Shown here one piece after another: positions 38,868 through 41,900 of a DNA stretch of 64,000 bases. The stretch covers positions 1,302,001 to 1,366,000 of the forward strand of contig NC_083242.1 in assembly GCF_032191835.1 (NCBI RefSeq), written 5' to 3'. The notes beneath the pieces were generated by a model. The model saw only the letters and a list, made by a program, of their open reading frames with translations. It made no database searches and was not told the origin of the DNA. The stretch comes from Heteronotia binoei (Eukaryota). Position numbers and translations under genes: made by a program. Numbering within the stretch: position 1 is the first letter of the stretch; every line of letters starts with the position of its first letter.

Positions 38868-38962
38868 ATGGCTTTCCACCGCAACCAGAAGCTGAACTTG
38901 CTGCGAATTGTGGTGCTTCTCACAGTCGCCCTGGCAGGACTCAAGTTTTTCTTCCGGGACAG
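38868..38962 (+). CDS. HEXD-like coding exon 1 (signal anchor)
   Basis: cag|aaATG; [31 protein letters not shown]; phase 2 donor gtcagt matches next exon. Confidence 0.75.
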
Positions 38963-41900
38963 GTCAGTGCTTTGGGGAGGGGAGGGTGGCAAGCTGGCAG
39001 GCAGGTGGGCTCTCCAGCCTGGGGTGGGGTGGGGCAACCCATAGGTGTGCCATTTAGGGCAGCCATAGAATGTTCCCCAATGGTCTTTTCCGGCTGCATG
39101 CACCTTACCGATGAATGGAGGATTTGGCTCCATTCAGTCACATGGAACATTGGCCAAGGTTAGCAGTGTGCAAAAGCTGCTCGGGGGGCAGTGGAGAATG
39201 GGGTATTCTTTGCTTGGGAACAGGGAATTATTCTTGGCCTTGGGAAGGGATCTGTCCTCAGCAGACGCTTCTTCCTCAGGGGCTTTCTGTGCCATCTTGT
39301 GGCCGGTTCACTTGCTCCCAGCTGGCCTGGCCTGGCCTTTGGCATATCTGACTGCTCAGTTGCCTCCCCCCCCCCCCCGGCCATTCCTTCCTCTCCCCCT
39401 CCTGTAGTTCTGTCTACTTGTGTCTTTAAAGTATGAATGTTCCTTTGGCAGGAAAAATAGGGAAAGGGAATTGGCTTGATTTAGTTCCGCATTTATTAAT
39501 GGAATGAAGAGCCCCATGGTGCAGAGTGTTTAAGCTTCAGTTCTGCAGTCCTAAGCTCTGCTTGCGACCTGAGTTCGATCCCCAGCGGAAGCTGGGTTTT
39601 CAGATAGCCAGCTCGAGGTTGACTCAGCCTTCCATCCTTCCGAGGTCGGTAAAATGAGTCCCCAGCTTGCTGGGGGGAAAGTGGAGAGGACTGGGGAAGG
39701 CACTGGCAAACCACCCCATAAAAAGTCTGCCGTGAAAACGTGAAAGCAGCGTCAGCCCGGAGTCAGAAATGGCTGGTGCTTGCCATTAAAGGGCCTACCT
39801 TTATCTTTCTTTTTTAACTGAGCTGTAGAATTCACTGCGAGTGGAGGTAGAGATGCCCACAAGCACAGATGGATTTAAAAGGGAGCTAGTCAGGTGGCTC
39901 CAAGTTGACTCAGCCTTCCATCCTTCCGAGGTCAGACGAAGGAGTCCCCAGCTTGCTGGGGGGAAAGTGTAGATGACTGGGGAAGGCAATGGCAAACCAC
40001 CACGTAAAAAGTCTGGCATGAAAACGTTGTGAAAGCAACGTCAGCCCAGAGTTGGAAACGACTGGTGCTTGCACAAGGGACCTTTCCTTTCCTTATTAAT
40101 GGAACAGCTCTTGTTTAGGACATGGGGAGTTGTGCGACGGGATCCTTGTGCATTTCTCCGTCTCCTTTTTTAAAAAAACACACACACTCATACTGTATTT
40201 GGCATTTGTTGTATGTGGCTGCTGGGTCTACAGTCAATCCCCTCTCTGCTGTGGTGGCTAAGCAGAGCCTCCATGGTTAGAGGCAGTGTAGCTCAGAGAG
40301 GACATTGGTGCAAAAAGGTGAAATATAAACAACTAAAAGTTATGAGCCGAATTGTGCTAGGCCCTGGCAGGGGGGAGGATGAGATTTGGGGCCACGAGGT
40401 CTGTGCTCTCCTTCTGTTGTCCACCTGTGCAGTTTCACGCTGGATCAGCACAAAGGCACTGGCGGGGAGAGCATCTTCTGGGGCAGAGCTGGGGACCTTA
40501 AAGAGTCAGCCCAGCCCTGGGATGGATCTCTAGCACACCCCGAGACCAAGGCAGCCGCCGCGAGGCCGGAAGGTCAGAAGCAGCCTGTCCGGGATTTCAG
40601 CATGACCCAAATGCGGCTGGTGCACCTGGATCTCAAGGGAGCAGCCCCCAAAGTGTCCTACCTGGAGCAGGTGAGCAGGGCCTCCAGTTACGAGTGAGGG
40701 TGTGGGAGGGCGTGGACTGCCAACTTTTCTCCAGCTCCTGTTCCTGTTCTTCTAACAGCAGCATGATTTGCAGGTATTGTCGGTTGGCAGTGCTTCTTGC
40801 CCTGCCAGNNNNNNNNNNNNNNNNNNNNNNNNNNNNNNNNNNNNNNNNNNNNNNNNNNNNNNNNNNNNNNNNNNNNNNNNNNNNNNNNNNNNNNNNNNNN
40901 NNNNNNNNNNNNNNNNNNNNNNNNNNNNNNNNNNNNNNNNNNNNNNNNNNNNNNNNNNNNNNNNNNNNNNNNNNNNNNNNNNNNNNNNNNNNNNNNNNNN
41001 NNNNNNNNNNNNNNNNNNNNNNNNNNNCTCCTCTTGTTTCTGTTCTTTTTCCTCCTCCTTCTCTTGTTCTTCTTCCTCCTCCTCCTCCTCTTGTTTCTGT
41101 TCTTCCCCCTCCTCCTCTCGTTTCTTTTCTTCTTCCTCCTCCTTCTCTTGTTCTTCTTCTTCCTCCAACTCCTTCTCTTGTTCCTGTTCTTCTTCCTCCT
41201 CCTTCTCTTGTTCTTCTTCCTCCTCCTCCTCCTTCTCTTGTTTCTGTTCTTCTTCCCCCTCCTTCTCTTGTTCTTCTTCTTCCTCCTCTTGTTTCTGTTC
41301 TTTTTCCTCCTCCTTCTCTTGTTCTTCTTCTTCTTCCTCCTCTTGTTCCTGTTCTTTTTTCTCCTCCTTCTCTTGTTCTTCTTCTTCTTCTTCCTCCTCT
41401 TGTTCCTGTTCTTTTTCCTCCTCCTTCTCTTGTTCTTCTTCTTCCTCCTCCTCTTGTTTCTGTTCTTTTTCCTCCTCCTTCTCTTGTTCTTCTTCTTCCT
41501 CCTCTTGTTCCTGTTCTTTTTCCTCCTCCTTCTCTTGTTCTTCTTCTTCTTCCTCCTCTTGTTCCTGTTCTTTTTCCTCCTCCTTCTCTTGTTCTTCTTC
41601 TTCTTCCTCCTCTTGTTCCTGTTCTTTTTCCTCCTCCTTCTCTTGTTCTTCTTCTTCTTCCTCCTCTTGTTCCTGTTCTTTTTCCTCCTCCTTCTCTTGT
41701 TCTTCTTCTTCTTCCTCCTCTTGTTTCTGTTCTTCTTCCCCCTCCTTCTCTTGTTCTTCTTCTTCTTCCTCCTCTTGTTTCTGTTCTTTTTCCTCCTCCT
41801 TCTCTTGTTCTTCTTCTTCCTCCTCTTGTTTCTGTTCTTCTTCCCCCTCCTTCTCTTGTTCTTCTTCTTCCTCCTCTTGTTTCTGTTCTTTTTCCTCCTC

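What the first reader, a model, noticed from the sequence alone, without database searches (positions are those of the whole stretch)
38868..40670. Membrane-anchored (type II) form of a normally nucleocytoplasmic hexosaminidase
Seen: a basic short tail ([13 protein letters not shown]), a 16-residue hydrophobic segment ([16 protein letters not shown]) and a ~60-aa stem precede [10 protein letters not shown]; the catalytic HIGADE is intact. Known: mammalian HEXD lacks this extension and is nucleocytoplasmic, while nematode HEX-2/HEX-3 of the same subfamily are secretory-pathway N-glycan-trimming enzymes. Inference: reptiles may have a Golgi GalNAc/GlcNAc-trimming activity absent from mammals. 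In-frame ATGs at 40602/40611 could also give a HEXD-like cytosolic isoform. Caveat: I found no N-x-S/T sequon in the 503 codons.
Basis: partly seen in the sequence, partly recalled or inferred. Interest (0 to 1): 0.7.

Follow-up and report, generated by a model that had tools for sequence, protein, structure and literature searches.

The report
Gecko's anchored second hexosaminidase-D gene
The membrane-anchor exon is real and spliced, but it belongs to "hexosaminidase D-like", an old, already annotated sister gene of HEXD that sharks, fishes, amphibians, reptiles and birds all carry and that was not seen in mammals; it is not a reptile-specific form of HEXD.

Summary
Exon 38866-38962 (ATG 38868) encodes a basic tail and a hydrophobic segment. 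RNA-library contigs from two related organisms join it to exon 40433-40670 by a GT..AG splice. The HIGADE motif is intact.

The window is identical to Heteronotia binoei CM063344.1. Its exons translate exactly into residues 1-504 of the NCBI model "hexosaminidase D-like" (564 aa), so the N-terminus is already annotated.

The interpretation needs correcting. This gene is not the orthologue of mammalian HEXD. A rooted tree of the catalytic domain splits vertebrate sequences into two clades:
- HEXD proper: all sampled mammals, plus geckos, snakes, turtles, birds, caecilians and a bonefish. None of 120 has an anchor.
- HEXD-like: chimaera and sharks through to birds and squamates. 110 of 120 have the anchor.

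Fourteen species carry both genes. HEXD lies in OGFOD3-HEXD-CYBC1(-NARF) in a gecko and a bonefish. HEXD-like lies elsewhere.

Many invertebrate relatives are anchored too, so anchoring looks ancestral.

Type II, lumen-facing topology is the best reading (about 0.6) but remains inferred. The hydrophobic core is only 12 residues, and there are no conserved N-glycan sites. I found no paper on this paralogue.

The parts
29264..29291 (+). 3' end of the upstream non-coding exon (its start is unknown). It holds an in-frame ATG at 29284 that would add Met-Arg-Glu before the annotated start. The following intron starts with GC at 29292.
   Evidence: The 26 loose letters of the X3 RNA contig upstream of 38864 match window 29264-29289 exactly and uniquely. 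Sequence read.
38866..38962 (+). First coding exon. ATG at 38868, a 13-residue basic tail, a 12-residue uncharged core, then Lys and Phe-Phe-Phe (signal-anchor or signal sequence).
   Evidence: sequence and splice sites; spliced in RNA contigs; equals P0170 residues 1-31; conserved in 110 relatives.
40433..40670 (+). Second coding exon. Polar stem with the invariant Phe47-Trp48, then the first strand of the barrel ([10 protein letters not shown]).
   Evidence: The AF2 model has pLDDT below 50 for residues 31-83.
42880..42989 (+). Coding exon 3 ([10 protein letters not shown] region).
43957..44044 (+). Coding exon 4 (IPLVQTFGH region).
45938..46102 (+). Coding exon 5. It ends in HIGADE (46085-46102), the catalytic Asp231-Glu232 pair.
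47031..47214 (+). Coding exon 6 (LLWDDM region).
50047..50118 (+). Coding exon 7.
50401..50605 (+). Coding exon 8 (WFASAFKG ... TGWQ). It is followed by a GC-type donor (AG|gcaagg).
   Evidence: This exon was the query.
52330..52412 (+). Coding exon 9.
56529..56607 (+). Coding exon 10.
58298..58399 (+). Coding exon 11.
61346..61435 (+). Coding exon 12, the last one inside the window. The final coding exon (residues about 505-564) lies about 1.2 kb beyond base 64000.

Best explanation
The window carries the first 12 coding exons of Heteronotia binoei 'hexosaminidase D-like' (called HEXD-like or the L gene here). It is a GH20 subfamily-1 beta-N-acetylhexosaminidase and an old paralogue of HEXD. 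It is neither an isoform nor the orthologue of HEXD. Its first coding exon supplies a short basic tail and a hydrophobic segment of fixed design: Arg, 12 uncharged residues, Lys, then 3 aromatic or hydrophobic residues. A disordered stem of about 60 residues follows, then the TIM-barrel catalytic domain and a C-terminal helix bundle. Most likely the segment acts as an uncleaved signal-anchor. That would place the tail in the cytosol and the catalytic domain in the lumen of the secretory pathway, the Golgi-type type II layout described for nematode HEX-2 to HEX-5. There the enzyme would remove terminal beta-GalNAc or beta-GlcNAc from glycoconjugates. SHOWN here: the exon, its splicing into RNA, its conservation from cartilaginous fishes to birds, the separate gene identity (tree and gene neighbourhood), the GH20 fold and the catalytic Asp-Glu pair. 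INFERRED: that the segment is not cleaved, its orientation, the Golgi location, the substrates, and the loss of the gene in mammals.
For: Identity: the window equals H. binoei GCA_032191835.1 CM063344.1 with 0 mismatches over 35,133 bases, and all exon cores translate to P0170 residues 1-504. Splicing: contigs of RNA libraries X1 (718 nt) and X3 (1752 nt) join 38962 to 40433. X3 continues into an upstream exon and into exon 3. Conservation: 110 of 120 best relatives of a sturgeon member have the segment. The uncharged core is exactly 12 residues in 109 of 110. L12, R13, V16 and K26 are nearly invariant, and F47 and W48 are invariant. Paralogy: in a careful ML tree of the catalytic domain alone, rooted on 6 invertebrates, the L clade has support 100/100 and the HEXD clade 96/87. 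Fourteen species have one gene in each clade. Platypus, two marsupials and two placentals fall only in HEXD (a quick tree agrees). None of 120 HEXD-clade proteins has a hydrophobic N-terminus. Gene neighbourhood: HEXD lies in OGFOD3-HEXD-CYBC1(-Fe-hydrogenase-like) in bonefish and in the gecko Paroedura. The L gene lies beside HAGH and a second Fe-hydrogenase-like gene in milkfish, and downstream of a PGP/PDXP-family gene in this window. Enzyme: Pfam GH20 at 39.3 bits (cut-off 22.3). The match to T. suis HEX-2 (8QK1) has E 8e-80 over residues 79-548, and Foldseek gives E 4e-36 with TM 0.86. D231 and E232 are invariant. Layout: the AF2 model has a helix at 5-29, a disordered stretch at 31-83 and a folded domain at 92-557, mean pLDDT 85. 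The best 19-residue Kyte-Doolittle window averages 2.23. The N-side flank is more basic than the C-side (+2.7 against +1.75). Anchored invertebrate relatives exist (acorn worm, brachiopod, priapulid, limpet). Nematode enzymes of this subfamily have cytoplasmic, transmembrane and stem regions, and C. elegans HEX-4 is reported to act in Golgi N-glycan biosynthesis (PMC11308363).
Against: The purely hydrophobic core has only 12 residues. That is short for a membrane span and typical of a cleavable signal peptide, and small residues sit just before the Lys. Basic residues flank both sides, and the N-side is the more basic in only 68 of 110 proteins. There is no mark of a lumenal life. There is no sequon in the gecko protein and none in 90 of 119 L-clade domains, no sequon is conserved, and there are only about 3 Cys, none specific to the clade. 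Anchored invertebrate relatives average 3 sequons. No transmembrane or signal-peptide predictor could be run. No localisation, activity or glycan data exist. The transcriptomic raw reads sampled (X19, X20; about 6% of each run) gave zero depth on the exons, so expression level and isoform ratios are unknown. Absence from mammals rests on hit lists capped at 120 rows and on a paper's statement that mammals have four hexosaminidase genes. It was not tested on mammalian genomes.
Confidence: 0.6

Rival explanations
1. Cleaved signal peptide. The hydrophobic segment is removed by signal peptidase, and the enzyme is a soluble lumenal, secreted or lysosomal hexosaminidase rather than a membrane protein.
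For: The uncharged core is exactly 12 residues in 109 of 110 proteins, which is the size of a signal-peptide core. Small residues (Ala-Gly, Ala-Ala, Val-Gly, Ala-Thr) sit two to three positions before the conserved Lys.
Against: Signal peptides rarely keep their length and individual residues (L12, R13, V16, K26) from sharks to birds. The conserved Lys plus three aromatic residues extends the helix to 16-17 residues, and AF2 models one helix over residues 5-29. The tail, anchor and long disordered stem match the layout described for the nematode relatives (PMC11308363).
Confidence: 0.15
2. Membrane-tethered but facing the cytosol. The segment anchors the enzyme with its N-terminus outside and the catalytic domain in the cytosol, making a membrane-bound counterpart of cytosolic HEXD.
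For: There is no conserved N-glycan site, and 90 of 119 domains have no sequon at all. There are few cysteines and no clade-specific pair. Basic residues (K26, R30) follow the segment, and the C-side is as basic as or more basic than the N-side in 42 of 110 proteins. The sister enzyme HEXD works in the cytosol at neutral pH (PMC11308363).
Against: On average the N-side is the more basic, and short hydrophobic segments usually insert with the N-terminus in the cytosol (general knowledge). If the domain never met the glycosylating enzyme, sequons should drift at the expected rate, as they do in HEXD (1.05 observed, 1.18 expected). Here they are fewer (0.34 observed, 1.85 expected), and each one persists in very few species. 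This signal is weak once shared ancestry is allowed for. Anchored relatives in nematodes act on N-glycans (PMC11308363).
Confidence: 0.12
3. Reptiles have turned HEXD itself into a membrane-anchored form by adding an upstream exon, and a HEXD-like cytosolic isoform may come from internal ATGs.
For: The catalytic core is clearly related to HEXD, and the extension is absent from mammalian HEXD.
Against: The tree and the gene neighbourhood place the gene in a different, older clade than HEXD. Geckos have a separate HEXD. The anchor occurs from cartilaginous fishes to birds. ATG 40602 is not kept in the closest relatives.
Confidence: 0.03

Closest known systems
Nematode GH20 subfamily-1 hexosaminidases HEX-2 to HEX-5 (T. 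suis HEX-2, PDB 8QK1; C. elegans HEX-2/-3/-4/-5)
   Same: Same subfamily and fold (E 8e-80 by sequence, TM 0.86 by structure). Same order of parts: N-terminal tail, hydrophobic segment, stem, TIM barrel with an Asp-Glu pair, C-terminal helix bundle.
   Different: Only about 32% identical. The hydrophobic core is shorter (12 + Lys + 3, against 18-22 in the invertebrate relatives seen). There are almost no N-glycan sequons, against about 3 in anchored invertebrate relatives. No activity or localisation data exist for any vertebrate member.
Vertebrate HEXD (HEXDC), the nucleocytoplasmic hexosaminidase D
   Same: Sister clade within vertebrates (support 100/100 for vertebrates together). Same catalytic motifs and C-terminal bundle, and about 50-60% identity over conserved exons.
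   Different: It is a separate gene. HEXD has no hydrophobic N-terminus in any of 120 proteins. It starts about 11 residues before the first barrel strand and lies in OGFOD3-HEXD-CYBC1. The window's gene has the anchor and stem, lies in another neighbourhood, and was not seen in mammals.
Insect fused lobes (FDL) and other Golgi type II glycosidases and glycosyltransferases
   Same: The general layout of short basic tail, signal-anchor, stem and catalytic domain, and a glycan-trimming role in the secretory pathway (PMC11308363, PMC2492878).
   Different: FDL belongs to GH20 subfamily 2 (the HEXA/HEXB side), so the likeness is in layout and possible role, not in descent.

Membership tests
GH20 subfamily 1 (HEXD / HEX-2 type) | GH20 catalytic-domain profile match above the curated threshold | tested here: met
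   PF00728, 39.3 bits against a cut-off of 22.3, E 6.5e-10, on P0170, which equals the window's exon translations.
GH20 subfamily 1 (HEXD / HEX-2 type) | Catalytic Asp-Glu pair in H-x-G-x-D-E, plus a Tyr within about 100 residues downstream | tested here: met
   HIGADE at 46085-46102. D231 and E232 are invariant and Y308 nearly invariant in 41 orthologues. The criterion is taken from PMC11308363.
GH20 subfamily 1 (HEXD / HEX-2 type) | TIM barrel followed by a C-terminal helix bundle, closest to the subfamily-1 structure | tested here: met
   The AF2 model has pLDDT above 90 over most of residues 92-557, with helices at 449-472, 492-523 and 526-557. The best PDB match is 8QK1.
GH20 subfamily 1 (HEXD / HEX-2 type) | Beta-N-acetylhexosaminidase activity | not testable with these tools
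   Needs a recombinant enzyme assay.
Orthologue of mammalian HEXD | Groups with mammalian HEXD in a rooted tree | tested here: not met
   It falls in the other vertebrate clade (100/100). Mammals fall only in the HEXD clade (96/87).
Orthologue of mammalian HEXD | Lies in the OGFOD3-HEXD-CYBC1 neighbourhood | tested here: not met
   That neighbourhood surrounds the anchor-less gene in Paroedura and Albula. The window instead has a PGP/PDXP-family gene upstream. Its downstream side is outside the window.
Type II (Golgi-type) membrane glycosidase layout | Short N-terminal tail with basic residues next to the hydrophobic segment | tested here: met
   The 13-residue tail has R5, K8 and R13. R13 is nearly invariant.
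Type II (Golgi-type) membrane glycosidase layout | Hydrophobic segment long enough to span a membrane and not cleaved | tested here: inconclusive
   12 uncharged residues + Lys + 3 aromatic residues. The 19-residue Kyte-Doolittle mean is 2.23, and AF2 models a helix at 5-29. No transmembrane or signal-peptide predictor was available.
Type II (Golgi-type) membrane glycosidase layout | Flexible stem between the anchor and the catalytic domain | tested here: met
   Residues 31-83 have pLDDT below 50. The sequence there is poorly conserved apart from F47 and W48.
Type II (Golgi-type) membrane glycosidase layout | Marks of lumenal exposure (N-glycan sites, disulfide pairs) | tested here: not met
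   No sequon in P0170, none conserved in the clade, and about 3 Cys with no clade-specific pair. This lowers but does not exclude the reading.
Type II (Golgi-type) membrane glycosidase layout | Localisation in the Golgi or secretory pathway | not testable with these tools
   Needs cell biology.

The most novel reading that the evidence does not exclude
Jawed vertebrates other than mammals keep a lumen-facing, Golgi-type GH20 subfamily-1 hexosaminidase, the ancestral anchored form. Its sister copy, HEXD, lost the anchor and became cytosolic, and mammals then lost the anchored copy. The anchored enzyme would trim beta-GalNAc or beta-GlcNAc (for example LacdiNAc or the alpha1,3-arm GlcNAc) during glycan maturation. 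It would contribute to glycome differences between mammals and other vertebrates, and it would be under selection to avoid being N-glycosylated itself.
Probability: 0.3. Interest if true: 0.65.

Novelty: new member of a known kind. Interest (0 to 1): 0.42.

Why it matters
Reviews of animal hexosaminidases treat glycan-processing GH20 enzymes in the Golgi as an invertebrate and plant feature. They list vertebrate (mammalian) subfamily 1 as the single cytosolic HEXD, whose role is still unknown (PMC11308363; PMC2492878).

The data here show that most vertebrate classes also have a second subfamily-1 gene with the invertebrate-style anchor and stem. Three things follow:
- It gives an evolutionary frame for HEXD: the cytosolic enzyme looks like the derived copy.
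- It names a concrete candidate for a hexosaminidase step in the secretory pathway of fishes, amphibians, reptiles and birds.
- It is easy to test in zebrafish, Xenopus or chicken.

The gene models themselves are already public. What is new is the reading of them, not the sequence.

Tried and rejected
- **Single-exon Pfam scans.** Only the HIGADE exon gave a weak GH20 hit (20.2 bits, below the cut-off). Exons 2, 3 and 8 gave nothing. Single exons are too short, so I used the identical full-length database protein instead.
- **Raw RNA reads X19 and X20.** They gave zero depth on the exons at 6% sampling, so there is no isoform ratio, transcript start or expression level.
- **Sequon depletion as proof of lumenal exposure.** The raw counts look strong: 0.34 observed, 1.85 expected, 2.59 for the reversed motif. 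Counted by alignment column, sequons arise at 20 columns against 26-31 for control motifs, and one control (D-x-S/T) is about as rare. I keep this as suggestive only.
- **Papers.** The two HEXD papers (PMC2850170, PMC4878814) are not held. Searches for "hexosaminidase D-like", HEXDL, and HEXD with zebrafish, chicken or venom gland found nothing on this paralogue. A congress-abstract hit could not be read.
- **Earlier findings.** The search of earlier findings held nothing under these words for this genome.
- **Chance ORF or mis-splice.** Rejected on the evidence.
- **Third word search.** No query can bring a possible mammalian member above the hundreds of bird and reptile members in a list of 120 rows.
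Full report
**1. The observation**

On the + strand, 38868-38960 reads as a start codon, a 13-residue tail with three basic residues, and the segment [16 protein letters not shown]. The exon is bounded by a good acceptor (..ctgtgcag|AA) and a good donor (AG|gtcagt). Exon 40433-40670 gives a polar stem and then [10 protein letters not shown]. 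HIGADE is at 46085-46102.

**2. What the window is**

A search of 1.84 billion cluster representatives with the conserved exon 50403-50603 gave full-length relatives. A word search with one of them, sturgeon P0010, returned P0170, NCBI "hexosaminidase D-like [Heteronotia binoei]", 564 aa.

- The 12 exon cores in the window translate exactly to residues 1-504 of P0170. Splice sites are listed.
- The contig that encodes P0170 (GCA_032191835.1, CM063344.1) is identical to the window over 35,133 bases outside the N runs.
- The last coding exon lies about 1.2 kb past base 64000.

**3. RNA evidence**

Contigs assembled from RNA libraries of two related organisms join 38962 to 40433 with GT..AG ends. 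X1 is 718 nt with 0-4 differences per exon. X3 is 1752 nt with 2-6 differences.

The X3 contig runs on into exon 3. It also carries 26 upstream letters that match window 29264-29289 uniquely. That places a non-coding exon about 9.6 kb upstream. It is joined through a GC-AG intron and holds an in-frame ATG three codons before the annotated start.

The transcriptomic raw reads X19 and X20, sampled at about 6% of each run, gave no depth on the exons. Level and isoform ratio are therefore unknown.

**4. How widespread the N-terminus is**

Of the 120 best relatives of P0010, 110 have a hydrophobic segment before the catalytic domain. These span chimaera, sharks, bichir, sturgeon, gar, teleosts, coelacanth, caecilians, frogs, salamanders, turtles, crocodilians, birds, tuatara, lizards and snakes. 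The ten exceptions are partial models or predicted alternative isoforms.

- The design is fixed: Arg or Lys, exactly 12 uncharged residues (109 of 110), Lys or Arg, then mostly 3 uncharged residues.
- In a 41-species alignment, L12, R13, V16 and K26 are nearly invariant.
- F47 and W48 in the otherwise variable stem are invariant.

**5. It is not HEXD**

The quick tree and the careful tree agree. The careful tree used the catalytic domain only, so the trait's own columns were left out. It had 54 rows and was rooted on six invertebrates. Vertebrates split into two clades:

- An anchored clade (support 100/100) that contains the gecko gene.
- A HEXD clade (96/87) that contains platypus, two marsupials, two placentals, and the anchor-less "hexosaminidase D" of birds, crocodile, turtles, tuatara, skink, monitor, two geckos, snakes, caecilians, axolotl, a bonefish and a sturgeon.

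Fourteen species have one gene in each clade. None of 120 HEXD-clade proteins has a hydrophobic N-terminus. They start a median of 11 residues before the first barrel strand.

Gene neighbourhood agrees with the tree:

| Gene | Species | Neighbours | Call |
|---|---|---|---|
| HEXD | Albula (bonefish) | OGFOD3-type oxygenase, CYBC1, an Fe-hydrogenase-like gene | 70 |
| HEXD | Paroedura (gecko) | OGFOD3-type oxygenase, CYBC1 | 71 |
| HEXD ("hexdc") | medaka | cybc1 | 67 (PMC13686814) |
| HEXD-like | milkfish | HAGH, a second Fe-hydrogenase-like gene, a C2H2 zinc-finger gene | 68 |
| HEXD-like | this window | a PGP/PDXP-family first exon at about 2.1-2.7 kb | 57-59 |

A block that holds both a hexosaminidase and an Fe-hydrogenase-like gene in each copy points to a large-scale duplication before bony fishes split. 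Because the anchored clade includes cartilaginous fishes, the duplication probably dates to the base of jawed vertebrates or earlier. The earlier date is inference.

From memory, and not tested here, the human counterparts of HAGH, the second Fe-hydrogenase-like gene, PGP and E4F1 lie on 16p13.3, and HEXD-CYBC1-NARF lie on 17q25.3. That would fit a pair of old duplicated regions.

No mammal appeared among the anchored-clade hits. PMC11308363 states that mammals have four hexosaminidase genes: HEXA, HEXB, OGA and HEXDC. Loss in mammals is therefore likely but was not shown on genomes.

Invertebrate relatives with 18-22-residue anchors exist: acorn worm, brachiopod, priapulid and limpet. The nematode enzymes are anchored as well. 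The anchored state therefore looks ancestral, and the cytosolic HEXD looks derived.

**6. The enzyme**

- P0170 passes the Pfam GH20 threshold.
- It matches T. suis HEX-2 (8QK1) at E 8e-80 over residues 79-548.
- Its AlphaFold2 model (mean pLDDT 85) matches 8QK1 best, with TM 0.86.
- D231 and E232 are invariant.

Nothing suggests an inactive enzyme.

**7. Topology**

For a type II, lumen-facing protein:
- The tail is short and basic.
- The N-side flank is on average more basic than the C-side (+2.7 against +1.75).
- One helix is modelled over residues 5-29.
- The stem is disordered (residues 31-83).
- The best 19-residue Kyte-Doolittle window averages 2.23.
- The layout is the one described for the nematode relatives, one of which is reported to act in Golgi N-glycan biosynthesis.

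Against it:
- The uncharged core has only 12 residues.
- Basic residues lie on both sides.
- The domain shows no lumenal marks.

The gecko protein has no sequon and four Cys. Across 119 anchored-clade domains the mean is 0.34 sequons. The expectation from composition is 1.85, the reversed motif averages 2.59, and anchored invertebrate relatives average 3.0. HEXD shows no depletion (1.05 observed, 1.18 expected).

Such a depletion would itself argue for exposure to the glycosylating enzyme. Counted by alignment column, however, it is not robust: 20 columns against 26-31 for controls, with one control equally rare.

My estimates are about 0.6 for type II, 0.15 for a cleaved signal peptide, 0.12 for a cytosol-facing tether, and the rest for other readings.

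**8. Internal start codons**

ATG 40602 reads ACG in X1 and ACT in X3. Met92 is not among the conserved columns. A separate HEXD gene exists in geckos. A cytosolic isoform from this gene is therefore unsupported. A few predicted anchor-less isoforms in frogs, a salamander and a woodpecker leave alternative first exons possible.

**9. Literature**

I found no paper on a vertebrate "hexosaminidase D-like" gene. Intra et al. 2008 call the roles of the vertebrate clade B sequences obscure. The 2024 HEX-2 paper treats vertebrate subfamily 1 as HEXD only.

**10. Limits and rules kept**

Exons were sent singly by reference, and the identical database protein P0170 stood in for the whole.
- Locus L002 holds letters where the window has N runs. 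I counted them only and did not read or use them.
- No transmembrane or signal-peptide predictor was available.

**11. Verdict**

This is a real feature of a real gene, already annotated. The framing is not: it is neither reptile-specific nor a form of HEXD, but an old anchored paralogue shared by non-mammalian jawed vertebrates. It appears to be unstudied, which gives it moderate interest.

Noticed in passing
window 2028-2720 (+): First exon of a PGP/PDXP-family HAD phosphatase (Hydrolase_6 E 3e-27; TIGR01452 PGP_euk E 8e-45), in a GC-rich stretch about 26 kb upstream of the hexosaminidase gene's first exon. It is useful as a synteny marker for the anchored paralogue.
   Followed up: partly
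window 29292 and 50606: Two introns of this gene begin with GC rather than GT (AG|gcaagc and AG|gcaagg). Both are required by the RNA contig or by the exact protein match.
   Followed up: partly
window 29284-29286: There is an in-frame ATG in the upstream exon, three codons before the annotated start. It would give Met-Arg-Glu before Met-Ala-Phe. Several squamate models also carry longer N-terminal tails.
   Followed up: no
It is not a conserved start.
   Followed up: yes
window 39530-39800 and 39870-40140: Two SINE-like copies in intron 1 attract very many RNA reads and contigs from elsewhere (summed contig depth up to about 2e5), with many variant letters. This repeat family is abundant in transcripts.
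   Followed up: no
window 41028-42400: A purine-rich simple-repeat array of about 1.4 kb in intron 2, next to an N run, yields long Lys/Arg/Asn and Ser/Cys/Phe ORFs on both strands. They are mechanical ORFs, not genes.
   Followed up: no
window 34800-35786 and 62247-62693: ORFs with the C-terminal part of a LINE reverse transcriptase (the motif ...[27 protein letters not shown]...). These are retrotransposon fragments in an intron and before the last exon.
   Followed up: no
P0170 residues 47-48 (window about 40475-40480): Phe-Trp is invariant in the otherwise unconserved, disordered stem of all 41 aligned orthologues, and is found in 109 of 110 anchored proteins, 16-66 residues after the hydrophobic core. 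Its function is unknown. It could be a sorting, shedding or membrane-contact motif.
   Followed up: partly
anchored clade as a whole (alignment of 119 domains): There are very few N-glycosylation sequons: 90 of 119 domains have none, and none is conserved. Anchored invertebrate relatives have about 3. This is unexplained. It may be selection against self-glycosylation, but it is not robust once shared ancestry is considered.
   Followed up: partly
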